From positions 248,001 through 312,000 of IMG/VR virus record IMGVR_UViG_3300042473_001265: DNA of 64,000 nt; one strand, given 5' to 3'. A program made the translations under genes and the position numbers. Of the stretch, positions 3,133 to 64,000 are shown piece by piece (position 1 is the first letter of the stretch; each line of letters starts with the position of its first letter). A model generated the notes under the pieces. It made no database searches. It was given only the letters and a program-made list of their open reading frames with translations, and was not told the origin of the DNA.

Positions 3133-3951
3133 ACGGCCAAGCGGTAAACCAGAGGCAATTTCTTCTGTATACCATTCGGTATGTGCCAGCTGTTCCAGCC
3201 ATGCTGTACGATCTGGTCTGGCAGGATCGTTGATACGGGACAGATCTAAATTGCCCACTGGTGCAGCCAAACTGGTTGAATTGACAAACGCCGGAACACC
3301 AGCCAACACTGCTTGTGAGCCAGGTCCGCTGTTGTGATTGATCACAGCCCACGCAGTGGCCAAACACCGATCATAGTCAAAGTTATCATAGGTTCCCTGA
3401 ACCGGCGTGGGCATTTGTATAACACAACCTGGCACTGCACCTATACGCTGTCTTGGGTGTGGCCGTATAACAATGGGTCGATCTGTATATTCTCTAATCT
3501 TGCCAGCAGTTTCTGTCAGCCAGGCCACAGTGGGCGGTTGTCCAGCCCATTGTTCACTTTCTGAACGCTGTGCTGCAATGACAATATTGTATCCAGTGTT
3601 GGTCCAGGGCTTGGCTGTCAGTCGTAGGTTGGCTGCACGACCTGGTATCAACTCAGTGCCATAATAAGCAGTGCTGCCGGTTCCGTTCAATCCCAATTTC
3701 CATGTGCTGCCGCGCCGCAGCATGCCCACCTCGGCCACTATCACAGGCCTTCCGCTGTTTCTAAATGTTTGCCATATTTCACGATTGTGCTTCATGCGGC
3801 CGTGCCACAACTGACTCCAGATAACAGCAACATCTGCCGAACTGTCCATGTTGTTATGCTTGATACCCAGTTGGTCAAGACCTGTTCTAATGGCGTCAAA
3901 CACAGGCCCGCTGTTGAGTGCGCCATATTGGTCAAAAATACTTACTCTCAT
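3109..3951 (-). CDS. Putative GT-B glycosyltransferase (KpsS/capsule-biosynthesis-like), paralog of 7192-8100
   Basis: 'IVIRPHP', 'WAVINHNSGPGSQAVLAGVPAFV', 'PDRTAWLEQLA..W..EE..SG' shared with 7192-8100. Confidence 0.6.
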   Translation of the reverse strand: MRVSIFDQYGALNSGPVFDAIRTGLDQLGIKHNNMDSSADVAVIWSQLWHGRMKHNREIWQTFRNSGRPVIVAEVGMLRRGSTWKLGLNGTGSTAYYGTELIPGRAANLRLTAKPWTNTGYNIVIAAQRSESEQWAGQPPTVAWLTETAGKIREYTDRPIVIRPHPRQRIGAVPGCVIQMPTPVQGTYDNFDYDRCLATAWAVINHNSGPGSQAVLAGVPAFVNSTSLAAPVGNLDLSRINDPARPDRTAWLEQLAHTEWYTEEIASGLPLGRLLLPHPG

Positions 3952-3963
3952 AATATACCCGGT

Positions 3964-3969
3964 TAAATA
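3964..3969 (+). promoter_or_regulatory. TAAATA late-promoter-like motif
   Basis: TAAATA in the short divergent intergenic gap, followed by AAGGA SD and ATG 3993. Confidence 0.55.
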
Positions 3970-3992
3970 TACACTTAGTTATAAGGAAAACA

Positions 3993-4799
3993 ATGAGTCG
4001 TAAATTCTCTGTGGTCACCACATTCAACGCATCTGGCTACAAAAAATACGGCAAAAGAATGATCGAAACATTCCTGAACACATGGCCTGCAGAAGTTGAC
4101 TTGATAGTGTATGCTGAAGATTGCACTGTCGTTGAATCTGCACCCAACTTGCGTGTGTTAGATCTGCATCGGGACAGTCCAGAACTAGTGGCATTCAAAA
4201 CAAAATGGCGCGGTGTTCCCAAGGCCAATGGTGATGTGTCTGCTGACCCCACAAGAAACAACCGCAAAGACGCTGCCAAAGGATTCAAATGGAATGCTGT
4301 ACGCTTTGCTCACAAAGTATATGCTATATTTGCTGCTGCCCATGCTGCAACTGATTGGCTGATATGGATGGATGCTGACACTGTGTGTCATAGTCCTATC
4401 TCGATGGCGCAATTACACAATTTGTGTCCCGCCGCAGCTGACATTTGTTTCTTGGGTCGCAAAGGCAAATACACCGAATGCGGGTTGTATGCTATGAATC
4501 TGCGTTCTCCGGCCACATCAAAATTTCTCAAAGAGTTTCAGCGTGTGTACGACGATGCAGACAACGGAATATTCACCATGAAAGAATGGCACGACAGTTT
4601 TGTGTTTGATGTTGTGCGTAAATCAATGACGTTGGAACAACACGATTGGAGTAGCCATTTGATTTCGGGCGAAGGCCATCCGTTGATCAACAGTGAATGG
4701 GGTGCCTATCTAGATCACTTGAAAGGTGATCGCAAGTCATTGGGTCGTAGTAAATTAAGCGATTTAAAAATTAAAAGAACAGAGGCGTATTGGCAATGA
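3993..4799 (+). CDS. GT-A fold glycosyltransferase/nucleotide-diphospho-sugar transferase-like protein
   Basis: 'RFAHKVYAI' followed by 'LIWMDADT' DxD motif; inside the glycan locus. Confidence 0.7.
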   Translation: MSRKFSVVTTFNASGYKKYGKRMIETFLNTWPAEVDLIVYAEDCTVVESAPNLRVLDLHRDSPELVAFKTKWRGVPKANGDVSADPTRNNRKDAAKGFKWNAVRFAHKVYAIFAAAHAATDWLIWMDADTVCHSPISMAQLHNLCPAAADICFLGRKGKYTECGLYAMNLRSPATSKFLKEFQRVYDDADNGIFTMKEWHDSFVFDVVRKSMTLEQHDWSSHLISGEGHPLINSEWGAYLDHLKGDRKSLGRSKLSDLKIKRTEAYWQ

Positions 4800-5476
4800 A
4801 AAGCTACATCATTTGTTTAAGTAATATTCCTGCAAGTTTGAATAGTGGCCTTCGTTTACAAAAAGAACTGTCTAATTTTAAAATAGAAGCCGAATTGTTT
4901 GAAGGCTCTTACGGAGATCAAGCACTGATACAATATCAAAAAAATAATCGACAGTGCCATCCTTGGGGGTTTAAAGGACCCGATGTACCGTTTTTGGATC
5001 AGTGCAAGCAAGACCGCACAACTCCGGGCATAGTCGGATGTTTTGATAGTCATTACAGACTATGGAAACTTTGTGCAAACTCTGATCAACCCATTGTAAT
5101 ATGGGAAGACGATGCTCATGTAATTCGCCCGTACTACCCGGTTGAATGGACTGATGTTTTGATTCTGGCTAGTAGTCATACTAAGAAAATGGAAAAATAC
5201 AAGCATTATTTAGAATCTCCTACAGGTGATCCCACAGCTGAATACTATCAACGCAGCAGCCTTCCCGGCGCCGCCGGCTATGCAATAAAACCACATGCTG
5301 CACAGAAACTTGTAGATTTTTATCATCAATCATTCCTGCCGGCAGACAACGCAATAAATCAATACATAGTAAAAATTCAAATACATAATTACATGATGGG
5401 ACAGGCACAGGATAGAGAAAGAACACACGGTAGATCCAGCCTCATTAAAACTAAAATTTGGGATAAGGAAAATTAA
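4796..5476 (+). CDS. Glycosyltransferase family 25-like (LPS biosynthesis)
   Basis: 'YIICL', 'GIVGCFDSHYRLWK', 'IVIWEDDA', 'GAAGYAIKPHAAQKL', 'PADN'; start moved to ATGA overlap at 4796. Confidence 0.8.
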   Translation: MKSYIICLSNIPASLNSGLRLQKELSNFKIEAELFEGSYGDQALIQYQKNNRQCHPWGFKGPDVPFLDQCKQDRTTPGIVGCFDSHYRLWKLCANSDQPIVIWEDDAHVIRPYYPVEWTDVLILASSHTKKMEKYKHYLESPTGDPTAEYYQRSSLPGAAGYAIKPHAAQKLVDFYHQSFLPADNAINQYIVKIQIHNYMMGQAQDRERTHGRSSLIKTKIWDKEN

Positions 5477-5479
5477 TCA

Positions 5480-6025
5480 ATGTCATACAGTTTAAAAACA
5501 GGTAAATCAGAAACGCTTGCGTGGTTTCAAGAACACCATGAAAAAATTACAAAAATTGTTGACATTGGACCCGGGTCTGGTACCTACGTCAATCTCATTA
5601 AAGAACAACACAACTGCTGCAACTCTGCTTATTGGATTGGTATAGAAGTATGGGAGCCATACATAAAAAAATACAATCTAGAACAGCGATACGATCAAAT
5701 TATTAATCAAGATGTGCGTGAAGTAAATTGGGAAGCTCTGGGACCTGTTAGTGTTGTAATTGCCGGAGATGTACTGGAACATATCACAAAAGAACAGGCA
5801 ATGACATTGGTAGATAAAATTTTGTCAGTTTCGGATGTGTTGATTGCGAGCATTCCAATTGTACACATGCCGCAAGACGAACATGCATACGACAACCCTT
5901 ACGAGGCGCATGTAAAGGATGACTGGAGCCATGCAGAAGTGATGGACACCTGGTCCCATTATATAAAACATCATTACCTTAAAAGTAGAAAAAGTAAATT
6001 AGGTGTATACTGGATGAAAAAATGA
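5480..6025 (+). CDS. Class I SAM-dependent methyltransferase
   Basis: 'IVDIGPGSGTY', 'IGIEVW', 'GDVLEHI'. Confidence 0.85.
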   Translation: MSYSLKTGKSETLAWFQEHHEKITKIVDIGPGSGTYVNLIKEQHNCCNSAYWIGIEVWEPYIKKYNLEQRYDQIINQDVREVNWEALGPVSVVIAGDVLEHITKEQAMTLVDKILSVSDVLIASIPIVHMPQDEHAYDNPYEAHVKDDWSHAEVMDTWSHYIKHHYLKSRKSKLGVYWMKK

Positions 6026-36085: not shown

Positions 36086-37714
36086 ATGAGAGTAAAATTT
36101 TGTTCGCATAGTCTGACACAACTAATCAAGCATGAAAAAGTCAGTGTAAATCCTGCATGGCTCTACATGCAAAAATGGTACGAACTGCATGGAAAAAATC
36201 CCAATGTAAAATGGTTGCTTCCTGGGATTGTATTATTAGATCCAATGGATGTTGTAATTGATAAAATTGTGCAAGAACAACCTGATATTTTGGGTCTTGG
36301 ATTCTATGTTTGGAACTTTGACTTGCAATATCACATTGCCAGAGAAGTTAAAAAACAATTACCAGATATAATTATAGTCTGCGGCGGTCCGCAACTATCG
36401 GTACACAAAGAAACAGAGACTGACAACCAAGTTGATTTTTTCATCAACCATCCGTATATAGACTATGTAGTGTACGGCGACGGCGAACGACCATTTCAGC
36501 AAATTATTGATTATCATTCCGGGCTCCTGTTCAATAAAGACGAGTTTGTTAACATTATTGAAAATGCCAATGGGGTAAGAAAAATATATCCGCACGAAAC
36601 GTTGACAGATGAACTTTACCTAAGTCAAAGTCCTTATGTGAGTCAAGAAGCTCATATGGCCGAAGTGCGTGATCATCTGGCAGCTTACGGAATTCCAATC
36701 GAAGACCAATACTGGGCTATTGAATTTGCCCGAGGATGTATGTATAGTTGTACATTTTGTGATTGGTCACAAAATTTAACTAAAAAAGTCAAACGTCGTA
36801 CACACAACTGGAAACACGATATTGATTTGTTCCATCGACTAAATGTGGCCATACGAGAAACAGATGCCAACTTTGGACAATGGCCAGATGACATAAAAGC
36901 GTTTGATTATGCAATTTCTTTATATGATCCTGCTCGTAGTTTTTCTTTTATAGTGAACAACACTCCCAAACTCAAGAAAGATGTAACCGAGTATATTATT
37001 ACTCAAAATAGTCTTGTGTATGATGTTCCGCCTGTGATCAATCTTCAAGATGCCGATGAAGATGTATTAAAGGCAATCGATCGTCCAGCAGTTCCGTGGG
37101 AAGCTATTGTTAAAATGACAAACAATCTAAGAAATAACTTACCGCCTGAAAAATTTCGCAAGACAGAACTGCAATGCATACTAGGGTTACCGGGGCAAAC
37201 AGTTGACAGTCTAATTAATTCTTATGTTAAGTTTTTTGAATTGGGCTTGTTAAGAGCTTCATGGGCCAATTGGTCATTTTTACCAAACAGTCCAGCAGCT
37301 GATCCTGCTTATCAAAGATTCTGGGGGCTTGATATCAAGGAAGTGTACTTTGCATTTGAGTCTCATGTGGTGCCAGATCTTGGGGAACTATACAGCGAGT
37401 TAGCGTCTGGCAACAGTTTGTCAGACAAATTTTATAAGCTACCAATGGTGGTTGGTCATAAAACAATGAAAATGTTAGATTTATGGACTGCTCAAATACT
37501 AGCAAAAAAATGGAACGAGTTGACTAGTCGTGTAGATCTAGTAGAAAAATACAATAGTTCTCAGGTAAGAAACATACTGGGTAAATTAAAAACACACGCA
37601 ATAAAAGAAGCAACAACACAATATGACATACATCAACACCATATCAACCAGCATGGTATTGTTGTATGGGGTCATTACCAAACTGAATCAAAACTCATAC
37701 ACAAAAATCTTTAA
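36086..37714 (+). CDS. B12-binding-domain radical SAM protein
   Basis: 'PDILGLGFYVWN', 'IVCGGPQ', 'VVYGDGE', 'EFARGCMYSCTFCDW', 'ILGLPGQT'. Confidence 0.88.
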   Translation: MRVKFCSHSLTQLIKHEKVSVNPAWLYMQKWYELHGKNPNVKWLLPGIVLLDPMDVVIDKIVQEQPDILGLGFYVWNFDLQYHIAREVKKQLPDIIIVCGGPQLSVHKETETDNQVDFFINHPYIDYVVYGDGERPFQQIIDYHSGLLFNKDEFVNIIENANGVRKIYPHETLTDELYLSQSPYVSQEAHMAEVRDHLAAYGIPIEDQYWAIEFARGCMYSCTFCDWSQNLTKKVKRRTHNWKHDIDLFHRLNVAIRETDANFGQWPDDIKAFDYAISLYDPARSFSFIVNNTPKLKKDVTEYIITQNSLVYDVPPVINLQDADEDVLKAIDRPAVPWEAIVKMTNNLRNNLPPEKFRKTELQCILGLPGQTVDSLINSYVKFFELGLLRASWANWSFLPNSPAADPAYQRFWGLDIKEVYFAFESHVVPDLGELYSELASGNSLSDKFYKLPMVVGHKTMKMLDLWTAQILAKKWNELTSRVDLVEKYNSSQVRNILGKLKTHAIKEATTQYDIHQHHINQHGIVVWGHYQTESKLIHKNL

Positions 37715-38452: not shown

Positions 38453-40036
38453 TTGGCTATTGTACAAATTTCGCGAATTACCCAGCGTAAAGGGTTACAA
38501 GAAGATCTACCGCAATTGGCAGGCGCTGAATTGGGATGGAGTATCGACGAACGCAGATTGTTCATTGGTAACGGAACATTGGAAGAAGGTGCTCCAGTAA
38601 TTGGTAATACAGAAATTCTCACTGAATTTTCTGACTTATTGTATCTGGTGCAAGATTATGTATATTCGGGCCAAGAAGCCACCGGATACACAGTACAAAC
38701 AGGTGCAACACCCGGAACTCCGGTTCAACTGTCCTTGCAAAACTGGATGGATCAATTTGCCACAGTCAAAGACTTTGGTGCAGTTGGCAACGGTGTTGCT
38801 GACGACACTGCGGCCATTAACCGCGCACTTTATCAATTGTACTGTAGAGAAGTGAATCCTGCAATTCGTAGAAGTTTATTCTTTCCAGCTGGCATTTACA
38901 AAGTTTCAGGCACTATTGTTATTCCACCCTATGCCACACTGATTGGCGAAGGCCCCAAGAACAGTATTATTCAACTGACAGCAACTGCCACAGCAGTTTA
39001 CACAATGCAGACTGGCGACAGCCTACAACAGACCGGTGTCAACATTGGCACCAATGGCGCTCAACCTCCAATAAGTGTCACATGTGAAAATATGGCCTTT
39101 GCCAGTCTCAAAGCAACAGATGTTGCATGTATAGAACAGGCAACTGAATTTGTGTTTAATCAGGTTGAATTCCTTGGACCATTGACCACTGTTGATTTGA
39201 CATCGGCTGTGGCCGATATTTCGTGTGTTAAATTTATCAGTACTGCTGCCAATGACACGCATCAGATCAAGTTTGACAACTGTACATTCTCCGGCTGTAC
39301 CTATGGCATGCGAACAGATCAGCAGGTGCGTGGTATTGACTTTACTGGATCACATTTCTCCACACTGTTCGAAGGCATACTGGTTGAGCCAAACCCCCTG
39401 GGTTCTGCCTATGACCCGCGTGGTATTGGCATACAAAGTTGCGACTTTGATACTATCTATGCTCGCGGCATTGTGTTTGAAGTGGAACGCAATGCCACTG
39501 CACAAAATACATTCGGTGATGTCGGCAACCACTTTGGTGGTGTCACACAGCCCTACACTGCCATTATTGATTTTGTATCGCCCAACAACATCAGCGTTGG
39601 CGATATTTTTGATCGACCAGACCAATATGCCACACTGTATCCCAGAGTTGATTTGAATGGCACTGCCAGCATTGCGTTTACCAATGGTCAACAGTTGGCC
39701 ATGGGTCCGTATGTGCGAGAATCTGGCCTCACAGCAACATTGAACAACAATGTAACTTCGCCCACTGCTGCTTTTTCTTACAGTGAACTTGACACCTGGT
39801 CACTCAACATTGATTACAGCATTTCTAGAAGCACTGCATATAGAACTGGCAGAATTACTGTTGTTTTATTTGACGGCGCCGGTGCGCTAACATACACTGA
39901 TGATTTTTCTGAAAATACTTCTACTGGCATCACGCTGACAGTGTCACAGACCGGTAATGAAATTTTTGTAAACTACGTCAGCACAAATACCGGCACCGGT
40001 GGATCGATAACCTACAGCATAAACCATATACATTGA
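38453..40036 (+). CDS. Tailspike/tail-fibre protein (Mtd_N-like N-terminus, pectate-lyase-like beta-helix)
   Basis: 'GAELGWSIDERRLFIGNG', 'TVKDFGAVGNGVADDTAAI', 'FFPAGIYKV'. Confidence 0.8.
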   Translation: MAIVQISRITQRKGLQEDLPQLAGAELGWSIDERRLFIGNGTLEEGAPVIGNTEILTEFSDLLYLVQDYVYSGQEATGYTVQTGATPGTPVQLSLQNWMDQFATVKDFGAVGNGVADDTAAINRALYQLYCREVNPAIRRSLFFPAGIYKVSGTIVIPPYATLIGEGPKNSIIQLTATATAVYTMQTGDSLQQTGVNIGTNGAQPPISVTCENMAFASLKATDVACIEQATEFVFNQVEFLGPLTTVDLTSAVADISCVKFISTAANDTHQIKFDNCTFSGCTYGMRTDQQVRGIDFTGSHFSTLFEGILVEPNPLGSAYDPRGIGIQSCDFDTIYARGIVFEVERNATAQNTFGDVGNHFGGVTQPYTAIIDFVSPNNISVGDIFDRPDQYATLYPRVDLNGTASIAFTNGQQLAMGPYVRESGLTATLNNNVTSPTAAFSYSELDTWSLNIDYSISRSTAYRTGRITVVLFDGAGALTYTDDFSENTSTGITLTVSQTGNEIFVNYVSTNTGTGGSITYSINHIH

Positions 40037-56215: not shown

Positions 56216-57424
56216 ATGACCATCAGATCAACACCCACGCATTGCAGTTTTTGTGACAAGCACAAGGATCAAGTCGTCAAACTGATTGTGGGGCACAATG
56301 TAGGCATATGCAACGAGTGTGTTGATTTTTGTCACGGGCTACTGATAAAAGAACAGGCCAAAACAAAAAACGTCACAGAAGAATCAATTTTAGATCCACG
56401 AGCAATACACAAATATCTTGATCAGTATGTGATTGGTCAACCAACTGCTAAAATTGTGTTGAGTGTGGCTGTGGCCAATCATTACAAGCGCATCAGTGAT
56501 ACAGGTCTAGAACAAGAAATACAAAAAGCCAATATCTTAATAACAGGACCAACCGGCACAGGCAAAACACTGATGGCCCGTACTGTGGCCAAATATTTAG
56601 ATGTTCCTTTTGTCATTGCAGATGCAACCACATTGACCGAAGCAGGTTATGTGGGTGATGATGTTGACAGTTTGATCACACGGTTATATCATGCCAGTGG
56701 AAATGATGTGGAACGCACACAGCGCGGTATTATATTCCTAGACGAAGTAGACAAAATAGCCCGCAAAAGCGAAAGCGCCACGGTAACACGGGACATATCC
56801 GGCGAGGGTGTGCAGCAAGCACTGCTCAAACTGATCGAAGGTACCAAGTGCAAAGTGGCCCAGCAAAATAGTCGCAAGGTCTCAACAGGTGAAACAGTTG
56901 ACATCGACACTACCAACATCCTGTTTATCTGTGGTGGAGCTTTTGTTGGGCTAGACAAAGTTATCAAAACCCGCACACACGGAACTGCCATTGGATTTGG
57001 TGCAAAGTTAACAGTGCCAAACAACGCCACAACAGAAGCAATCACTCCAGACGATCTAGTACGCTACGGAATGATACCGGAGTTTGTGGGAAGATTTCCC
57101 AGCATTATACAACTGGACGAGCTGACCAAACCACAACTTATTACCATTCTTACCGAAGTAAAAAACAACCTGGTTGGTCAGTACAGATGGTTGTTTAACC
57201 AAGATGGGGTAGCATTGGACTTTGATACCGACAGTTTAGATCTAATTGCTGAACGCACAATGGTCACAAAAACTGGTGCTCGTGGACTGCATACAGAACT
57301 AGAGCGTGTGTTGTTGCCGCATATGTACAACTTGAAAGATTATCAGTCACGCAATGTGCTAAAAATTGCCATTGACAAAACACAAGTCACAACGCCTCTT
57401 AAATTAGAACAACAAAATTCTTAA
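56216..57424 (+). CDS. clpX: ATP-dependent Clp protease ATP-binding subunit ClpX
   Basis: 'CSFC...CNEC..FC', 'GPTGTGKT', 'GYVG', 'FLDEVDK', 'IGFG', 'GARGL'. Confidence 0.95.
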   Translation: MTIRSTPTHCSFCDKHKDQVVKLIVGHNVGICNECVDFCHGLLIKEQAKTKNVTEESILDPRAIHKYLDQYVIGQPTAKIVLSVAVANHYKRISDTGLEQEIQKANILITGPTGTGKTLMARTVAKYLDVPFVIADATTLTEAGYVGDDVDSLITRLYHASGNDVERTQRGIIFLDEVDKIARKSESATVTRDISGEGVQQALLKLIEGTKCKVAQQNSRKVSTGETVDIDTTNILFICGGAFVGLDKVIKTRTHGTAIGFGAKLTVPNNATTEAITPDDLVRYGMIPEFVGRFPSIIQLDELTKPQLITILTEVKNNLVGQYRWLFNQDGVALDFDTDSLDLIAERTMVTKTGARGLHTELERVLLPHMYNLKDYQSRNVLKIAIDKTQVTTPLKLEQQNS

Positions 57425-57429
57425 ATTTA

Positions 57430-57460
57430 TTGACAGATGTTGAGATATCTGTTATAAATA
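57430..57460 (+). promoter_or_regulatory. Overlapping sigma70-like (TTGACA-17-TATAAA) and late (TATAAATA) promoters
   Basis: TTGACA 57430-35, TATAAATA 57453-60. Confidence 0.7.
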
Positions 57461-57464
57461 ATCG

Positions 57465-57525
57465 TGTAGTGCCCATGGTGGGGCTACATTTTAAAAGTCA
57501 TCTTGCTTAATAAAGGAGAAAACAA
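57465..57525 (+). promoter_or_regulatory. ROSE-like RNA thermometer in the hsp20 5'UTR
   Basis: 5' hairpin TGTAG-TGCCC-ATGGT-GGGG-CTACA; 3' hairpin CTTGCTT-AATA-AAGGAG with a UUGCU motif pairing the SD. Confidence 0.65.
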
Positions 57526-57984
57526 ATGACAAAAACTCTCACCCTTCGCTCTTTCGACATTCCTGCAATTCACAAATTTGGCATCGGATTCGACAACATG
57601 TTTGATGATCTCATGCGTGTGAGTGCTCAACAATCTACCACAAATTATCCACCTTATGATATTGTACAAATCAACGAAGATGAGTACATGATTGCTGTGG
57701 CTGTGGCCGGATTTGGCGACGACAATCTTTCAGTGATCAAGGACAAAAAAGTTTTGGTCATTGAAGGTAAGCACAGCCGTGAAACTGTGGACAATGAAGA
57801 TTCTACTGCAAAATATCTGCACAAAGGCATCAGTGAAAGACATTTCCGCAGGGAATTTCAGTTGGCTGATCATGTGGAAATTGTCAATGCAAATCTTGAA
57901 CTGGGCATCTTGAGCATACACCTAAAGCGTGATATTCCTGAAGAAGCCAAGCCAAAGACCATTGCAATCAACTACAAAAAGTAA
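57526..57984 (+). CDS. hsp20: Small heat-shock protein (Hsp20/IbpA family)
   Basis: 'IGFDNMF', 'NYPPYDI', 'AVAGF', 'YLHKGISER.F.R.F.L', 'GILSI.L'. Confidence 0.95.
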   Translation: MTKTLTLRSFDIPAIHKFGIGFDNMFDDLMRVSAQQSTTNYPPYDIVQINEDEYMIAVAVAGFGDDNLSVIKDKKVLVIEGKHSRETVDNEDSTAKYLHKGISERHFRREFQLADHVEIVNANLELGILSIHLKRDIPEEAKPKTIAINYKK

Positions 57985-58045
57985 TATAATAATCATAAGT
58001 ACAGTGGCAGCACAGTGCTGCCACTACTACAACAAAGGACACACT

Positions 58046-58360
58046 ATGACATCACCAGATATCAATACATTAATCAAATCAAAAGTAGAACTGCGTGAAC
58101 CACCAATGTTTAAGATCATCTACTTGAACGACACCAAGACATCTGTAGATTTTGTAGTTGAAAGTTTAATCACACACTTTGAATACACAGCAGACACTGC
58201 TGTCGCCATCACTGAAGATATCCATAATTCTGGATCCGCAGTGGTAGCAGTATTGCCCTACGAAATTGCTGAACAAAAAGGCATCGAAGTCACTGTGGAT
58301 GCTCGCAATCATAATTTTCCATTGCAGATCAAGCTGGAACCTGAAACAGTTGTGCATTGA
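58046..58360 (+). CDS. clpS: ClpS N-degron adaptor-like protein
   Basis: 'PPMFKIIYLND..T..DFV', 'IHNSG.AVV...YEIAE', 'FPL'; AAGGA SD before ATG 58046. Confidence 0.9.
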   Translation: MTSPDINTLIKSKVELREPPMFKIIYLNDTKTSVDFVVESLITHFEYTADTAVAITEDIHNSGSAVVAVLPYEIAEQKGIEVTVDARNHNFPLQIKLEPETVVH

Positions 58361-59617: not shown

Positions 59618-60193
59618 ATGAAAAAATTAAATTACCTGGCGGCAATTTTGGGGTTTGTTGCCGTTTCTGCGTTTGCACAGTCAGACCCAATTGTGACTGA
59701 CAGTACCAGTCGTAGTACCAGCACCAGCAACAATACCAATACCAACATCAGTGACAGTCGTAGTGTGAGTGACAGCACTCAGACTCTACGGTCGCCACCA
59801 CCCACGGCCGTGGCACCAGCAGTCACAACCATCAACAATGATGTGTGCGCTGTGGTAGCATCAGGTGCTGTGCAAACACAGATTTTTGGATTCAGCATGG
59901 GCGGTACCATGCGGGACATGAACTGCGAACGCATCAAACTCAGCAAGAACTTGTTTGACATGGGCATGAAAGTAGCAGCCGTGGCCACCTTGTGCCAAGA
60001 CGAGCGTGTGTTTGCTGCCATGATTGCAGCAGGAACACCTTGCCCCATAGACGGCAAAATTGGTGTACAGGCCAAGGCTGAATGGGACAGTCGCGGTGTG
60101 CTAGCAAATGACAAAAAGGCCATTGGCTTCTACGGCGTACCGCCCAAAAAAGCACCTGCTGCTGTTGTGTCTGAGACTCCTGAGGTCAAATGA
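59618..60193 (+). CDS. Signal-peptide-bearing protein with four Cys
   Basis: 'MKKLNYLAAILGFVAVSAFA|QSD'; Ser/Thr linker; 'C..SGAVQTQIFG...NCER...LCQD..VF.AM..AGTPCP'. Confidence 0.75.
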   Translation: MKKLNYLAAILGFVAVSAFAQSDPIVTDSTSRSTSTSNNTNTNISDSRSVSDSTQTLRSPPPTAVAPAVTTINNDVCAVVASGAVQTQIFGFSMGGTMRDMNCERIKLSKNLFDMGMKVAAVATLCQDERVFAAMIAAGTPCPIDGKIGVQAKAEWDSRGVLANDKKAIGFYGVPPKKAPAAVVSETPEVK

Positions 60194-62436
60194 AACTGAT
60201 CAGTCAACTGCTTGTGGCATTGGCTGTGTCAATCTCAGGGTTGACTGTGTCAGCACAGACCACAGGAACCAGTGCTCCACTCACAGGCAGTTGGAACAAT
60301 GTAGTGACCGGCACTCATCCCGGTGCCAATGAGTGTTGCTGGGGCGGTCCACAACCTCTGTATGATCCTGCAACCAACACCATACATTTCTCCTACACTC
60401 TGACCGCAGTGCATAGAGTCATAGCCATCAATCAAGCACTGTCTGGTTCTGGTGTACAAATCAATGGGTACAACTGGGGCTATGATTTGAGAAACATGAA
60501 CGGTGTGCGTGGTGTGCAAACCGGAACTGACTCTATTGTGGCCACCACATTCATGACCAATCGGTTCAATCAGTTTCTAGCGCAAGATGACCGACACTAC
60601 AACACACAGTTTGACTGGACTAGATTTTCTGGCACAGTGGGATTGCCCACTAGTGTGAGCCTGGCAGATAGTGGTTCCCTGGGCATTCAGTTTGTGGCCA
60701 ACGACAGCGGTAACTGGGGTGGATATTACGGCCCTCAGGTGCGCGATGTTGAGATGACTGTGAACTATACCTCGGCACCGCCGGATCCTTGTGTGGCCAA
60801 TCCTCAGAGTTCGCCTTCATGCCCGGGCTACACAATTATTTCAGACAACCTGGTGCCATTTCCCAACCACTGGACCACTGCCGGCCAAGGCATCAATCAG
60901 ACCTATGCCATCAACCAGGCCCTGAGTTCAGTGGGCGCTGGTGTTGTGATCCACGGTTTCAATTATGGCTATCAATACAATCTGGGCAGCTCATACTCTC
61001 AGTGTACAGCGTTCAATCAAGACGGCAGTTGCTCATGGACCATGACATTTAATCCGCGAGTGGATGTGAACTTTAAAATTCGCAGCAACACCAATAGCCT
61101 GTTGTATGATGTTACTCACAGCGAAACTGGCAATAATACCGGCAATCGCAGTAGAGATTATCAATACAGATTTGCCAATCCCCGATCAATCACTGAACTG
61201 GGCAACATTGGATACTCAGCTACGACTGCAGGTAATTCTACAATTTTTGGTATGTATAGCCAGGCTGCTTATACCATAGACGAGTGCGTGGTCAACCCAC
61301 TTAGTTCAACCACCTGCTCGGGCTATGCACAGGCCTACTTTGACCAACAGTGCGGTGCTAATCCCCTATACAACTCACAGTGTGCTGGCTATGCACAGGC
61401 CTATTTTGATCAACAGTGCTCGAACAATGCGTTATACAGCTCACAGTGTCCAGGCTATACTCAGGCCTATTTCAACCAACAATGCACAGCCAATTCCTTG
61501 TACAGCACTGCCTGTCCAGGATATGCCACTGCCTACTACAATTATCAGTGTTCGGCCAACCCATTATACCACACAGGCTGTACAGGATATGCACAGGCCT
61601 ATTTTGACCAACAGTGCAGCTTGAACACACTTTACAATTCGCAGTGTCCTGGGTATGCTGATGCCTATTATGTACAACAATGCACTGGCAGTCCACTGTA
61701 TGATTCAGGATGTACAGGATATGCTCAAGCCTACTTTGATCAACAGTGCGGCCTGGATCCACTCTACAATTCGCAGTGTACAGGCTATCGTGAAGCTTAT
61801 GCTTTGAAATACATTGTGATTGAAAAACCCAAGGCAGAAGAAACAGTGTCAGTCGGAGTCATGGCCATAGCAAACACCGCTCCGGCAGCAGCCGAACCAG
61901 CACCTCCAGCAGCACCTGCACCAATGGCCACAGCATCGCCTGCAGAGTCTGCCACTGCCCCTGTGCAACTTGTGCCACCACCTGCACCCGTGGCCGCAGC
62001 AGCACCTGCAGAAAGCAAAAAAGAAACCAAGGCCACTGCTGATGCAACCAGCAGCACCTCCGGCACCTCCAACAGCAGCGGTTCAAAAGAACAGCCCAAA
62101 ACCAATCGGCAAGCCTTGGCCGAACGCAGAATGGAAGCAGCCCGTGAAAAAGCAACAGCCGCGGCCAAACAAAATCCTGCTGCAATGGCAGCACAAATGG
62201 ACGCAGCAGGCAGCATGGAACAACAGGTTGAACTGCAATCCGTGGTACTAGGTGCAATGGGATTTGTAGCAGGATTTGATACATACAGCCGCAGCACCAT
62301 ACCCGACGCTGTGGGATACAAGCCATTTGATATCTATCCTGGGCAGCGCAACATAGACTCACCTGCAGCAAGATTGCTGCTGGTGCGCAGTGATAGAATC
62401 CACCAAGACATGGTGGACAGTCAATACAAAAAATAA
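60190..62436 (+). CDS. Large signal-peptide-bearing protein with Cys-rich tandem repeats
   Basis: 'MKLISQLLVALAVSISGLTVSA|Q'; 8 x 22-aa repeats; Ala/Pro linker. Confidence 0.8.
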   Translation: MKLISQLLVALAVSISGLTVSAQTTGTSAPLTGSWNNVVTGTHPGANECCWGGPQPLYDPATNTIHFSYTLTAVHRVIAINQALSGSGVQINGYNWGYDLRNMNGVRGVQTGTDSIVATTFMTNRFNQFLAQDDRHYNTQFDWTRFSGTVGLPTSVSLADSGSLGIQFVANDSGNWGGYYGPQVRDVEMTVNYTSAPPDPCVANPQSSPSCPGYTIISDNLVPFPNHWTTAGQGINQTYAINQALSSVGAGVVIHGFNYGYQYNLGSSYSQCTAFNQDGSCSWTMTFNPRVDVNFKIRSNTNSLLYDVTHSETGNNTGNRSRDYQYRFANPRSITELGNIGYSATTAGNSTIFGMYSQAAYTIDECVVNPLSSTTCSGYAQAYFDQQCGANPLYNSQCAGYAQAYFDQQCSNNALYSSQCPGYTQAYFNQQCTANSLYSTACPGYATAYYNYQCSANPLYHTGCTGYAQAYFDQQCSLNTLYNSQCPGYADAYYVQQCTGSPLYDSGCTGYAQAYFDQQCGLDPLYNSQCTGYREAYALKYIVIEKPKAEETVSVGVMAIANTAPAAAEPAPPAAPAPMATASPAESATAPVQLVPPPAPVAAAAPAESKKETKATADATSSTSGTSNSSGSKEQPKTNRQALAERRMEAAREKATAAAKQNPAAMAAQMDAAGSMEQQVELQSVVLGAMGFVAGFDTYSRSTIPDAVGYKPFDIYPGQRNIDSPAARLLLVRSDRIHQDMVDSQYKK
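61285..61812 (+). repeat. In-frame tandem repeat, 8 x 66 bp (CxxNPLYxxxCxGYAQAYFxQQ)
   Basis: Unit starts at 61285, 61351 and onward every 66 bp; two invariant Cys per unit. Confidence 0.92.
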
Positions 62437-62447
62437 AGGAGACCAAA

Positions 62448-63068
62448 ATGTCAGAAGAAATTAAAGATGTCAATGCCAAAATTGACGAAGCTGAAAAAGC
62501 TGTAAAGAAGTATGCCAGCAAAGACACTGTGATCAGCATTGGCGGGTATGAATTTACTCCAGCCAAGCTCATGGTAGCAGCTACCATTGTGAGTTCAACA
62601 CTAGGCGGCTTATATGGTGCGTTTGAAGTGTACAAGGACTATCAGGGCATGAAGAAAAAGATTGCTGAATATTCAGCACCAGACTTGAGTGGCTTTGACA
62701 AAAGGCTGGCCGTGATTGAAGAAAATTCAGGCAAGACCAGCGACTACACTCGTGACATCAAAAATGATCTAAAGAACGATATTCGCCGCAACGAAACTGT
62801 GACAGAACAAGTGGAGCGCAGTGTAAAAACTGCTCAGCGTGAGACTGAAGCTGAAATGCGAGCAGCCCGCAAAGATGTGCGTGAAGACCTTGACAAGGCT
62901 CGTGCTGAAGTCAATACTATACGCAAAGAAATGGCTGATGCTCGTAGAGAGATCAATTCTGAAACTCAATCACTCAAGAGAGAAGTCAATAGAGAAGTGG
63001 AAGCATTGAAGAAAGAACTTGATCAAAAAATTCAGCGAGCCATTGATAATCCCTTGGCTGGTAAATAA
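62448..63068 (+). CDS. Membrane-anchored coiled-coil protein
   Basis: AAGGAG SD; TM 'LMVAATIVSSTLGGLYGAF'; long heptad region. Confidence 0.75.
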   Translation: MSEEIKDVNAKIDEAEKAVKKYASKDTVISIGGYEFTPAKLMVAATIVSSTLGGLYGAFEVYKDYQGMKKKIAEYSAPDLSGFDKRLAVIEENSGKTSDYTRDIKNDLKNDIRRNETVTEQVERSVKTAQRETEAEMRAARKDVREDLDKARAEVNTIRKEMADARREINSETQSLKREVNREVEALKKELDQKIQRAIDNPLAGK

Positions 63069-63083
63069 TTCAAAGGAGTTAAC

Positions 63084-63632
63084 ATGGCAGAAGAAAAGAA
63101 ACCCCTATCAAGATCAGAACGTGAAGCACAAATCAAGGACAAAGCAGGCTTAGTAATTGTTTTCATGGCCTTGTTCCTAGCAGCAAATACATACATTGCC
63201 AACAACTTCAGCAGTGTAGCACAAACCAATCTGCTGAAGGCCAGCAACACCTACGGATTTTATCAGTCCAAAAGTATCAAGCAAACTCTGGCTGAAGGAC
63301 AACTGGAAGAAGCCCGGATTGTTGGCAACAAAGAACGCATGGAAAAACTGCAGGCCAAAATTGATCGCTACGAGTCAGAACCCGACACAGGCGAAGGCAA
63401 ACGAGAGTTATTGGTCCGAGCACGAGCACAAGAAGCTGCAAGAGATGAAGCTAGACTACACAGTCCGTGGCTGAACTTTTCGGGCATGCTGTTTCAGTTG
63501 GCCATTGTGCTGTTATCTGCCAGTATTTTAGCAGTTAACATGCGTATGTATTGGGGTTCAATAGGAGTAGGAGCACTAGGTCTGGTACTCATGAGTCAAG
63601 GCCTATGGCTGTGGGCTCCGCTAAGTATGTAA
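63084..63632 (+). CDS. Membrane protein (DUF4337-like)
   Basis: N-terminal TM, 'YQSKSIKQ', coiled coil, two C-terminal TM helices. Confidence 0.7.
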   Translation: MAEEKKPLSRSEREAQIKDKAGLVIVFMALFLAANTYIANNFSSVAQTNLLKASNTYGFYQSKSIKQTLAEGQLEEARIVGNKERMEKLQAKIDRYESEPDTGEGKRELLVRARAQEAARDEARLHSPWLNFSGMLFQLAIVLLSASILAVNMRMYWGSIGVGALGLVLMSQGLWLWAPLSM

Positions 63633-64000
63633 TGACATATTTAATTTACACCTTGATAGTCACGCACATTACCATAGTGTGCGTGACTTTGTTTTTGCAC
63701 CGTAGCCAAGCACATCGTGGCGTGACTTTTCATCCTGTGATTGCTCATGCCATGAGATTTTGGTTGTGGTTGACCACAGGCATGGTCACCAAACAATGGG
63801 TTGCAATACATCGCAAGCATCATAGATTTAGTGATCAACAAGGTGATCCGCATACACCACATGTGTATGGCATCAGGCGTGTGCTATTTCGAGGAGCAAT
63901 GTTATATCATGCAGCAAGCAAAGATAAAGTCATGGTTGATTCATACGGCGTTGGTACTCCTGCTGATTGGATGGAGCGCAACATATACACTGCTCACAGT
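63632..64000 (+). CDS. Membrane fatty-acid (acyl-CoA delta-9-like) desaturase, N-terminal part (runs off the window)
   Basis: MTYLIYTLIVTHITIVCVTLFLHRSQAH...WVAIHRKHH...DPH: first two His boxes; TAATG-coupled. Confidence 0.9.
   Translation, partial: MTYLIYTLIVTHITIVCVTLFLHRSQAHRGVTFHPVIAHAMRFWLWLTTGMVTKQWVAIHRKHHRFSDQQGDPHTPHVYGIRRVLFRGAMLYHAASKDKVMVDSYGVGTPADWMERNIYTAHS

What the first reader, a model, noticed from the sequence alone, without database searches (positions are those of the whole stretch)
59618..63632. Late four-gene module of exported and membrane proteins with a disulfide-repeat stalk
Two proteins have Sec-type signal peptides (rare for virion parts). One has 8 tandem 22-aa repeats with paired Cys that would form periplasmic disulfides, plus a ninth isolated copy (CVANPQSSPSCPGY) upstream. 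They are followed by a TM-anchored coiled coil and a 3-TM protein. This looks like a trans-envelope or surface complex built in the infected cell (superinfection exclusion, adhesin, lysis accessory or receptor decoy), with no recognisable named family.
Basis: partly seen in the sequence, partly recalled or inferred. Interest (0 to 1): 0.6.

Follow-up and report, generated by a model that had tools for sequence, protein, structure and literature searches.

The report
Conserved phage periplasmic three-gene cassette
A 340-kb lake phage carries a three-gene cassette shared by thousands of aquatic phages, including cultured Pelagibacter phages: two exported proteins plus a membrane-anchored coiled coil, the middle protein bearing sugar-binding-like heads on a disulfide-repeat stalk; it has never been studied and probably builds a tethered binding device in the infected cell's envelope.

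Summary
The sequence features are real. There are four co-directional, tightly spaced genes. Two have Sec-type signal peptides. One has eight tandem 22-aa Cys-pair repeats plus an isolated ninth copy. They are followed by a TM + coiled-coil protein and a multi-TM protein.

Three descriptors fail:
- The conserved unit is three genes (A-B-C), not four. Gene D is only loosely linked and belongs to Pfam DUF4337.
- The region is not "late". It lies among ribonucleotide reductase, ligase, helicases, ClpX/ClpS/Hsp20 and a fatty-acid desaturase.
- Gene A matches PHROG 20531.

A-B-C keeps its order in at least 60 distinct viral contigs and in cultured phages (Pelagibacter phages HTVC115P, HTVC202P and Mosig; Roseobacter phage CRP-810). 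A and C are constant. B is modular: variable lectin-like beta-sandwich heads, 1-14 disulfide repeats, a disordered linker and a conserved C-terminal domain. The families are very large (B at least 2,900 clusters, C at least 8,000), and I found no functional annotation in the databases or literature searched.

Spanin membership fails: there is no lipobox and no endolysin linkage. My best guess (about 0.35) is a periplasmic, membrane-tethered binding device used for superinfection exclusion or receptor masking. Rivals are envelope maintenance, a lysis accessory and a surface adhesin. Function is inferred, not shown.

The parts
59618..60193 (+). Gene A: exported 191-aa protein. Layout: Sec signal peptide (aa 1-20), Ser/Thr/Asn-rich low-complexity stretch, PPPTA motif, then a small four-Cys helical domain (about aa 72-165).
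   Evidence: ORF and signal. PHROG 20531, E 2.4e-16. Invariant C77, C103, C126 and C142 in 37 relatives. No Pfam, NCBIfam or PADLOC hit. The AF2 core at aa 100-160 has pLDDT about 80 and no fold match (best Z 2.4).
60190..60255 (+). Gene B, signal peptide (aa 1-22, cleavage predicted after VSA).
   Evidence: 67/68 relatives have an SP-like N-terminus; 1/68 has a lipobox-like motif.
60256..61284 (+). Gene B, two beta-sandwich 'head' domains (aa about 32-200 and 215-365). Each ends in a Cys-x9-Cys-x-G-Y cap; the first cap is the isolated ninth repeat at aa 201-214 (60790-60831).
   Evidence: AF2 pLDDT mostly 84-96 in head 1 and lower in head 2, with dips to about 50-57 at aa 201-230 and 271-290. 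Foldseek matches: tandem CBM22 (4xup, E 7e-7), Fbs1 sugar-binding domain (1umh, E 7e-6, TM 0.53, rmsd 3.5 over 138 columns), CBM51. The internal duplication motif scores E 3e-6. This is the part that varies most among relatives.
61285..61812 (+). Gene B, eight tandem 22-aa disulfide repeats (aa 366-541). Each is modelled as a Cys-bracketed loop plus a 12-residue helix, together forming a stalk.
   Evidence: pLDDT 85-90. Relatives have 1-14 copies. 2,901 database proteins match this region, none with a Pfam domain.
61813..62097 (+). Gene B, Ala/Pro/Ser/Thr-rich disordered linker (aa 542-636).
   Evidence: pLDDT 30-44. Length and composition differ in every relative.
62098..62436 (+). Gene B, conserved C-terminal helical domain (aa 637-748) and stop codon. 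I propose it as the docking domain.
   Evidence: It is the only non-repeat part of B conserved across the family (own HMM E 8e-36). Its divergence tracks that of both A and C (partial correlations 0.44 and 0.43). The model is low-confidence.
62448..63068 (+). Gene C: bitopic membrane protein. Layout: TM at aa 41-59, a conserved juxtamembrane motif (FE-x-Y-K-D-Y ... A-P-D-L), a coiled coil of variable length, and a conserved C-terminal D-N-P-L-A motif.
   Evidence: At least 8,000 relatives without Pfam. There are only weak sub-threshold coiled-coil hits.
63084..63632 (+). Gene D: DUF4337 membrane protein (hydrophobic segments at aa 20-42, 130-155 and 160-178). It is a frequent neighbour, not a core member of the cassette.
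   Evidence: Pfam PF14235, E 1.7e-28, 100.2 bits. It lies within 6 kb in only about 5 of 58 loci found through B, and A, B or C lie nearby in about 37 of 80 loci found through D, at variable distance and orientation.

Best explanation
A-B-C is a self-contained accessory cassette that phages of Gram-negative aquatic bacteria exchange.

**Proposed assembly in the infected cell's periplasm**
- C is the inner-membrane anchor: one TM helix plus a coiled coil of variable length.
- B is exported by Sec. It docks through its conserved C-terminal domain.
- From there B holds out two lectin-like beta-sandwich heads, on a flexible linker and a disulfide-stapled helical-repeat stalk.
- A is a conserved, disulfide-bonded periplasmic partner. 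In half of the relatives it is itself membrane-anchored by a C-terminal hydrophobic tail.

**Proposed function**
The heads are swapped and the stalk length changes from phage to phage. I therefore propose that they bind something variable: a host envelope glycan or receptor, or a part of an incoming phage. The most likely outcome is superinfection exclusion or receptor masking.

**Shown versus inferred**
- Shown: gene order and co-conservation, export signals, the Cys pattern, the modular variability of B, and the fold class of the heads.
- Inferred: the physical complex, the topology of C, the ligand and the biological outcome.
For: - **Conserved order.** A-B-C keeps its order in at least 60 distinct viral contigs with B identity down to 26%. 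The same order occurs in unrelated cultured phages of 32 to 141 kb, while the window's own phage is 340 kb. This is the behaviour of a mobile accessory module.
- **Export.** Signals are conserved in A and B. Cys are invariant in A and paired in every B repeat.
- **Constant ends, variable middle.** A and C are constant while the B position is hypervariable; in many loci it is not even recognisable by BLAST between a conserved A and C. Metagenome contigs pile up 10-fold over the 5' half of C but not over B.
- **Heads.** They have a carbohydrate-binding / receptor-binding jelly-roll fold.
- **Docking domain.** The C-terminal domain of B co-varies with both A and C, while the A-C correlation mostly disappears once B is accounted for.
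- **Context.** The cassette lies outside structural and lysis regions.
- **Precedent for the function (from general knowledge, not tested here).** The layout of anchor, flexible linker and binding domains resembles the tethered exclusion lipoprotein Ltp of Streptococcus phage TP-J34. Fast-diversifying phage genes are typically receptor-binding, exclusion or counter-defence genes.
Against: - No homology to any known exclusion protein, and no PADLOC hit beyond weak coiled-coil matches.
- The complex prediction of the B C-terminus with C gave no verdict.
- The positive-inside rule slightly favours a cytoplasmic coiled coil for C (mean K+R of 0.9 before the TM against 2.9 after it). That would change the geometry, although lambda Rz shows the same bias.
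- The B heads have no paralogue among the phage's own genes, so a decoy of its own receptor-binding protein is not supported.
- In large phages the neighbours are envelope and proteostasis genes (desaturase, Peptidase_S11, LpxH-like phosphoesterase, Hsp20, ClpS). That fits an envelope-maintenance role equally well.
- No expression or localisation data exist.
Confidence: 0.35

Rival explanations
1. Envelope-maintenance device of the infected cell. The cassette tethers inner membrane, cell wall or outer membrane, with the B heads binding peptidoglycan or lipopolysaccharide sugars. This keeps the envelope of a small, fragile host intact while the phage remodels lipids and wall during a long infection.
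For: - Recurrent neighbours are a fatty-acid desaturase, a D-Ala-D-Ala carboxypeptidase (Peptidase_S11), an LpxH-like phosphoesterase, Hsp20 and ClpS.
- The heads have a carbohydrate-binding fold.
- The anchor-linker-binding layout resembles TolA/TonB/OmpA-type tethers (my own knowledge).
- The length of the B tail correlates weakly with the length of C (rho 0.36, p 0.003, not corrected for phylogeny).
Against: - A generic tether would not need hypervariable heads or 1-14 repeats.
- Small phages without those neighbours also carry the cassette.
- No peptidoglycan-binding family (OmpA_C, LysM, SPOR) is detected in any member.
Confidence: 0.2
2. Lysis accessory of the spanin kind. C acts like an i-spanin. 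A, which in half the relatives has a C-terminal membrane tail like a unimolecular spanin, and B supply the link to the outer layers. Together they disrupt the outer membrane, or set lysis timing, at the end of infection.
For: - C has the i-spanin layout of an N-terminal TM plus coiled coil.
- 33/69 A relatives have a signal peptide plus a C-terminal hydrophobic tail.
- In one uncultured podovirus a true Phage_lysozyme gene lies about 740 bp downstream of the C-like gene.
- No endolysin from five common Pfam families, and hence no lysis cassette, was located in the 340-kb genome.
Against: - There is no lipoprotein signal anywhere: lipobox in 0/69 A and 1/68 B.
- In HTVC202P the M15 endolysin with its small downstream genes lies 20 kb from the cassette.
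- The window's cassette sits among replication and chaperone genes.
- The 'lysozyme' next to the cassette in CRP-810 is a mis-annotated C homologue with no lysozyme domain.
- Spanins have no need for variable lectin-like heads.
Confidence: 0.15
3. Surface fibre or adhesin. B, and in some phages extra small secreted subunits, is exported beyond the outer membrane. It changes how infected cells stick to particles, to each other or to prey.
For: - B has the heads, repeat stalk, low-complexity linker and C-terminal sorting-like domain typical of cell-surface proteins.
- A variant cassette carries three further small secreted proteins between a short B and C, as in multi-subunit fibres.
Against: - No outer-membrane channel, usher, autotransporter barrel or known sorting signal is found in the cassette.
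- The C-terminal domain of B is predicted helical, not a known secretion domain.
Confidence: 0.1
4. Virion proteins: a tail-fibre-like receptor-binding protein with its assembly partners.
For: The heads share their jelly-roll fold with many tail-fibre and host-specificity proteins in the viral structure library.
Against: - Cleavable signal peptides are conserved in A and B.
- The Cys pairs would need an oxidising compartment.
- The cassette lies outside structural modules in the window and in HTVC202P and Mosig.
- The same cassette occurs in podo-, sipho- and myovirus-type genomes with unrelated tails.
Confidence: 0.05

Closest known systems
Two-component and unimolecular spanins (lambda Rz/Rz1, T1 gp11)
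   Same: - C has an N-terminal TM helix followed by a coiled coil, like an i-spanin.
- Half of the A relatives combine an N-terminal export signal with a C-terminal membrane tail, like a u-spanin.
- All are phage-encoded envelope proteins.
   Different: - There is no lipoprotein signal and no embedded or overlapping partner gene.
- There is no consistent linkage to holin or endolysin.
- A large, variable, lectin-like third component is present.
- No sequence similarity was detected.
Tethered superinfection-exclusion proteins (Ltp of Streptococcus phage TP-J34; T4 Imm/Sp; T5 Llp, phi80 Cor)
   Same: - They work alike in concept: a phage product placed in the envelope of the infected or lysogenic cell that binds a receptor or an incoming phage part.
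- Ltp has the same logic of membrane anchor, flexible Ser-rich linker and binding domains.
- This comparison comes from my own knowledge, not from a test.
   Different: - The known examples are single small proteins or lipoproteins.
- Here there are three conserved genes, a 400-1,000-aa binding component and no lipid anchor.
- No homology was found, and exclusion has not been tested.
Carbohydrate-binding jelly-roll modules (tandem CBM22 of Xyn10C, Fbs1 sugar-binding domain, CBM51)
   Same: The two N-terminal domains of B share this fold (Foldseek E 7e-7 to 3e-5; TM 0.5 over about 138 residues for Fbs1).
   Different: - Sequence identity is only 7-14%, and no Pfam CBM family is matched in any of 37 family members.
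- Sugar binding is not shown.
Pfam DUF4337 (PF14235)
   Same: Gene D is a clear member (100.2 bits against a cut-off of 27).
   Different: - The family has no known function; only two papers in the library mention it, in passing.
- D is not a core member of the cassette.
TolA / TonB-type periplasm-spanning anchors
   Same: Both have an inner-membrane anchor with an extended helical or Pro-rich spacer and a distal binding end. One relative of B is annotated 'transport protein tonB' by its depositors.
   Different: That annotation has no Pfam support. There is no TonB_C or TolA domain and no ExbB/TolQ-type partner.

Membership tests
Two-component spanin (i-spanin + o-spanin) | i-spanin: an N-terminal transmembrane domain followed by a periplasmic coiled-coil domain | tested here: inconclusive
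   C has one TM (aa 41-59) and a coiled-coil-like charged helical region. Which side of the membrane the coiled coil faces cannot be decided from charge bias.
Two-component spanin (i-spanin + o-spanin) | o-spanin: a small outer-membrane lipoprotein with a lipobox and Cys at +1 | tested here: not met
   A lipobox-like motif occurs in 0/69 A and 1/68 B relatives. The window's A and B have AFA|Q and VSA|Q signal-peptidase-I sites.
Two-component spanin (i-spanin + o-spanin) | Genes lie in the lysis cassette beside holin and endolysin | tested here: not met
   - HTVC202P: the M15 endolysin is 20 kb away.
- Window: the neighbours are ClpX/ClpS/Hsp20, RNR and ligase.
- Only one uncultured podovirus has a true lysozyme within 1 kb.
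- The own genome has no hit to five endolysin Pfams.
Unimolecular spanin (T1 gp11 type) | An N-terminal lipoprotein signal and a C-terminal transmembrane domain in one protein | tested here: not met
   A C-terminal hydrophobic tail is present in 33/69 A relatives but not in the window's A. None has a lipobox.
Pfam DUF4337 (PF14235) | Score above the curated gathering threshold over the full profile | tested here: met
   D scores E 1.7e-28 and 100.2 bits against a cut-off of 27, covering profile positions 5-160 of 161.
PHROG 20531 (unknown function) | Significant match to the family profile | tested here: met
   A scores E 2.4e-16, with aa 30-146 matching profile positions 159-277 of 314.
Carbohydrate-binding module / galactose-binding-like jelly roll | The fold | tested here: met
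   Foldseek probability is 1.00 to CBM22, Fbs1 SBD and CBM51. The atlas search finds FBA and CBM_4_9 clusters. Model pLDDT is above 90 for most of head 1.
Carbohydrate-binding module / galactose-binding-like jelly roll | Sequence-family membership and sugar binding | tested here: not met
   No Pfam CBM hit in the window's B or in 36 relatives. Binding itself cannot be tested with these tools.
Known anti-phage defence / exclusion systems (PADLOC-DB) | Match to any component model | tested here: not met
   A, B, D and E give no hit. C gives only weak (E 1e-4 or worse) matches to the coiled-coil tails of ZorA and JetC.
Superinfection exclusion (functional class) | Expression of the genes lowers infection by a second phage | not testable with these tools
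   This needs plating, adsorption and DNA-entry assays in a culturable host.

The most novel reading that the evidence does not exclude
A-B-C is a previously unrecognised class of phage-encoded periplasmic machine: a membrane-tethered, disulfide-stiffened 'lectin on a stalk'. The most abundant marine and freshwater phages, pelagiphages included, would use it to mask receptors or trap incoming rivals. Its swappable heads and variable repeat number would record phage-phage and phage-host arms races in the plankton.
Probability: 0.3. Interest if true: 0.8.

Novelty: categorically new. Interest (0 to 1): 0.62.

Why it matters
The three families are very large: at least 2,900 clusters for B and at least 8,000 for C at 90% identity. 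They sit in phages of the ocean's and lakes' dominant bacteria, including cultured Pelagibacter and Roseobacter phages. Yet all are annotated as hypothetical or mis-annotated.

Recognising them as one syntenic envelope-targeted cassette, with constant anchor parts and a swappable binding part, turns thousands of unknown genes into one testable hypothesis. Cultured phage-host pairs already exist for the test.

If the cassette controls superinfection, receptor availability or envelope integrity, it bears on co-infection, host range and viral lysis rates in plankton. The 22-aa disulfide repeat would also be a new structural repeat.

Tried and rejected
- **Family scans.** Pfam, NCBIfam, PADLOC and PDB-sequence scans of A, B and C gave nothing beyond sub-threshold coiled-coil hits. 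Scanning 37 A and 37 B relatives one by one gave no consistent Pfam family. The NIDO-like 'DD..V.L.F.FPFYG' look of some B heads was therefore not confirmed.
- **Fold search for A.** Best Z was 2.4, i.e. no match.
- **Complex prediction.** B residues 630-748 with C gave no verdict (score 0.00, controls not run). This is not evidence either way.
- **Decoy of the phage's own receptor-binding protein.** No second copy of the B heads or repeats exists in the 340-kb genome.
- **Locating the lysis cassette.** The own genome has no hit to Phage_lysozyme, Peptidase_M15_3, Peptidase_M15_4, SLT or Amidase_2, so distance to lysis genes could not be measured there.
- **Repeat-number variation within the lake population.** Contigs break in the repeats, and only 3-bp indels in the linker were seen.
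- **Expression.** No RNA run holds the stretch.
- **Literature.** Searches for DUF4337, pelagiphage signal peptides, exclusion with Cys repeats and HTVC115P found nothing on these genes.
- **Extra secreted proteins of the variant cassette.** They look pilin-like to the eye but match no Pfam family and show no similarity to the B heads.
- **Depositor annotations.** 'OmpA family protein', 'transport protein tonB' and 'lysozyme' for relatives are not supported by Pfam.

Full report
**Where the window lies**

The window is positions 248,001-312,000 of a 340,172-bp virus record judged 98% complete. The same stretch is held by at least 24 lake-water metagenome runs, so this is a freshwater jumbo phage.

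The genes around the finding are not structural:
- ribonucleotide reductase large and small subunits, DNA ligase and two helicases;
- a radical-SAM protein, ClpX, Hsp20 and ClpS;
- a metallophosphoesterase on the opposite strand, and the start of a fatty-acid desaturase at the window's end.

Nothing supports calling the module "late".

**The observation**

Four genes lie head to tail on the + strand: A 59618-60193, B 60190-62436, C 62448-63068 and D 63084-63632. A and B overlap by 4 nt, and the next two gaps are 11 and 15 nt. C and D have strong ribosome-binding sites.

- **A and B** begin with canonical Sec signals.
- **B** has 22 Cys. Eight tandem 22-aa units of the form C-x9-C-x-G-Y-x2-A-Y-x3-Q cover aa 366-541, and one isolated copy sits at aa 201-214. 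The 66-bp period is also seen at the DNA level.
- **C** has one hydrophobic segment (aa 41-59) and then a charged helical region.
- **D** has three hydrophobic segments.

**Named families**

D is a clear member of Pfam DUF4337 (E 1.7e-28, 100.2 bits against a cut-off of 27), a family without known function. A matches PHROG 20531, also of unknown function. B and C match no Pfam, NCBIfam, PADLOC or PDB sequence. C gives only weak, sub-threshold hits to coiled-coil regions such as apolipoproteins, MutS2 and the ZorA tail.

**The conserved unit is A-B-C**

A scan of viral contigs found 58 loci with a relative of B and more than 155 with a relative of D.

- In every B locus that extends far enough, an A gene lies directly upstream and a C gene downstream. 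This holds even where B is only 26-30% identical.
- After removing duplicates, 61 distinct cassettes remain.
- D lies within 6 kb in only about five of the 58 B loci.
- About 37 of the 80 D loci have A, B or C nearby, but at distances from 15 bp to 1.5 kb, upstream or downstream, and sometimes on the other strand.

D is therefore a frequent neighbour in one group of large phages, not a core part.

A fourth protein, called E here, follows C directly in 27 of 61 cassettes. It is about 160 aa, with an amphipathic N-terminus, a coiled coil and a C-terminal TM. In the window's own genome its only copy lies about 200 kb away, at genome positions 102,204-102,689 on the minus strand.

**Cultured phages**

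The A domain is found in six Pelagibacter phages, two Roseobacter phages and Ralstonia phage RSP15. Profiles built from the metagenomic families recognise the following:

| Phage | A | B position | C | E-like |
|---|---|---|---|---|
| HTVC115P | gp54 | gp53 (carries the B C-terminal domain) | gp49 | - |
| HTVC202P | gp24 | gp25 | gp26 | - |
| T4-like Mosig | 00202 | 00201 | C-like by layout (00200) and weak profile hit (00199) | 00199 |

All are annotated as hypothetical. These phages are podo-, sipho- and myovirus-type genomes of 32-141 kb, so the cassette moves between unrelated phages.

- In HTVC202P it lies between the replication genes and the terminase, while the M15 endolysin is 20 kb away.
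- In Mosig it lies beside primase and ribonucleotide reductase.

**Anatomy of B**

An alignment of 37 relatives and an AlphaFold model (mean pLDDT 72) give five parts:
1. A signal peptide.
2. One or two N-terminal domains that differ between phages. The window has two beta-sandwiches. Head 1 (aa about 32-200) has pLDDT mostly 84-96; head 2 is less confident. They are related by an internal duplication (E 3e-6). Other phages have a different domain or none.
3. The Cys repeats, 1 to 14 copies, modelled at pLDDT 85-90 as a loop bracketed by the two Cys plus a 12-residue helix.
4. A disordered low-complexity linker that differs in every relative.
5. A conserved C-terminal domain of about 90 aa, predicted helical with low confidence.

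The heads match carbohydrate-binding jelly rolls:
- tandem CBM22, E 7e-7;
- the Fbs1 sugar-binding domain, E 7e-6, TM 0.53, rmsd 3.5 Å over 138 columns;
- CBM51.

In the viral library they match many tail-fibre and host-specificity proteins. The atlas search agrees. No Pfam CBM family is matched, so this is a fold-level resemblance only.

**Anatomy of A and C**

A consists of a signal peptide, a Ser/Thr/Asn-rich stretch, a PPPTA motif and a small domain with four invariant Cys. Only a four-helix core is modelled with confidence, and it matches nothing. In 33 of 69 relatives A ends in a hydrophobic tail; the window's A does not.

C has a conserved TM and juxtamembrane motif, a coiled coil whose length varies by insertions, and a nearly invariant C-terminal D-N-P-L-A. 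An -N-P-L- ending is even kept in the very divergent Mosig and HTVC202P homologues.

**Family size and spread**

- The repeat region of B has 2,901 relatives at 90% clustering.
- None has a Pfam domain, and the few source names are coiled-coil or low-complexity artefacts.
- The language-model atlas places A and B in virus-only clusters of hypothetical proteins.

In lake metagenomes, contig depth rises about ten-fold over the 5' half of C and several-fold over D. Over B it stays at the strain's own level. Co-occurring relatives therefore share C and D at 85% nucleotide identity or more, but not B.

**Cellular relatives**

The A domain also occurs in bacterial assemblies.
- The closest hits are phage-like contigs binned into taxonomically scattered metagenome-assembled genomes, again with a C gene about 2.5 kb downstream.
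- More distant hits (40-47% identity) lie in long chromosomal contigs of Hyphomonadaceae, Caulobacterales and Micropepsaceae. There they are stand-alone proteins with a signal peptide, a long Asn/Gly/Gln-rich stretch and the domain. They lack B or C, and their neighbourhoods are unrelated.
- They are patchy: 2 of 301 sampled genomes of that class and 12 of 101 of that family.

**A variant cassette**

In seven loci B is short (about 300 aa, with one repeat and the conserved C-terminus). Three further small secreted proteins lie between B and C. None matches Pfam. This shows that the exported part is modular and can be split into several subunits.

**What it most likely is**

The following point to proteins that act together in the periplasm or at the envelope of the infected Gram-negative cell:
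- conserved export signals;
- conserved Cys pairs;
- absence of any cytoplasmic enzyme domain;
- strict gene order.

Across 59 cassettes, the divergence of the B C-terminal domain tracks that of A (partial correlation 0.44) and of C (0.43). A and C are nearly uncorrelated once B is taken into account (0.17). This is weak evidence because the sequences share ancestry. It fits B's C-terminus as the part that touches both partners. The direct test, a complex prediction of the B C-terminus with C, gave no verdict.

The pattern of constant A and C with swappable heads and variable stalk length suggests that the heads meet something that differs between hosts or between competing phages. I therefore rank a tethered binding device for superinfection exclusion or receptor masking first (about 0.35).

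**Rivals**

- **Envelope maintenance (0.2).** This fits the recurring neighbours: desaturase, Peptidase_S11, LpxH-like phosphoesterase, Hsp20 and ClpS. It does not explain the variability.
- **Lysis accessory of the spanin kind (0.15).** It is suggested by the layout of C and of half the A relatives. Against it, no lipoprotein signal exists (0/69 A, 1/68 B) and linkage to endolysins is the exception. The 'lysozyme' beside the cassette in Roseobacter phage CRP-810 is in fact a C homologue without a lysozyme domain.
- **Surface adhesin (0.1).** It lacks any outer-membrane export component.
- **Virion role (0.05).** It conflicts with the signal peptides and the genomic position.

**Limits**

- Signal peptides and TM segments were judged with simple rules, not a trained predictor.
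- The topology of C is open. Charge bias favours the coiled coil inside, but lambda Rz shows the same bias.
- No expression data exist.
- The lysis genes of this phage were not located.
- Function is inferred throughout.

Noticed in passing
window 56216-58360: The phage encodes its own ClpX (with zinc finger and AAA domain), an Hsp20 small heat-shock protein and a ClpS adaptor in a row, just upstream of the cassette. Hsp20 and ClpS recur near the cassette in other phages.
   Followed up: partly
window 63551-64000 (probable start at the ATG overlapping D's stop near 63630): A fatty-acid desaturase gene starts at D's stop codon and runs off the window. Desaturases flank the cassette in at least 11 other loci. 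A 14-bp-stem hairpin followed by a T-rich tail (63658-63688) lies inside its first codons.
   Followed up: partly
own genome G000:C1:102204-102689 (-), locus L222:1462-1947: This is the only copy of protein E (about 160 aa, coiled coil, C-terminal TM). E follows gene C directly in 27 of 61 other cassettes, but here it lies about 200 kb from the cassette.
   Followed up: partly
L144, L149, L151, L155, L163, L165, L175 (e.g. L163:8419-10819): A variant cassette has a short B (about 300 aa, one repeat) followed by three extra small secreted proteins (about 165, 125 and 135 aa) before C. The first has a Cys near each end and looks pilin-like by eye, but no Pfam family matches.
   Followed up: partly
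L226 (Roseobacter phage CRP-810, OR671924.1) 5165-5587 and 3779-4534; L227 (MW202481.1) 4236-5342: The depositors' names 'lysozyme' (gp51), 'OmpA family protein' (gp53) and 'transport protein tonB' have no Pfam support. gp51 is a homologue of gene C, gp53 is a homologue of gene A, and the 'tonB' gene sits in the B position.
   Followed up: yes
L183:7323-8411, L220:7245-8420 and other chromosomal loci L183-L220: Stand-alone bacterial proteins in Hyphomonadaceae, Caulobacterales and Micropepsaceae carry the A domain behind a signal peptide and a 200-aa Asn/Gly/Gln-rich stretch. Their distribution is patchy (12 of 101 genomes of one family), and their function is unknown.
   Followed up: partly
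whole genome G000: No match to five common endolysin families (Phage_lysozyme, Peptidase_M15_3, Peptidase_M15_4, SLT, Amidase_2) in this 98%-complete 340-kb phage genome. Its lysis genes remain unidentified.
   Followed up: partly
window 62435-62839 and 63110-63514: In lake metagenome contigs, summed depth is about 10 times higher over the 5' half of gene C, and several times higher over D, than over B. Many co-occurring phages therefore share these stretches at 85% nucleotide identity or more.
   Followed up: no
window 36086-37714 and 38453-40036: The first ORF is a B12-binding radical-SAM protein. The second is a 527-aa protein with weak tail-spike / pre-neck-appendage-like matches, sitting among nucleotide-metabolism genes.
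   Followed up: no
L140 (Pelagibacter phage HTVC115P) 1511-1960: A gene annotated as a toxin-activating lysine-acyltransferase (HlyC-like) lies about 2.3 kb downstream of the cassette's C gene in HTVC115P.
   Followed up: no
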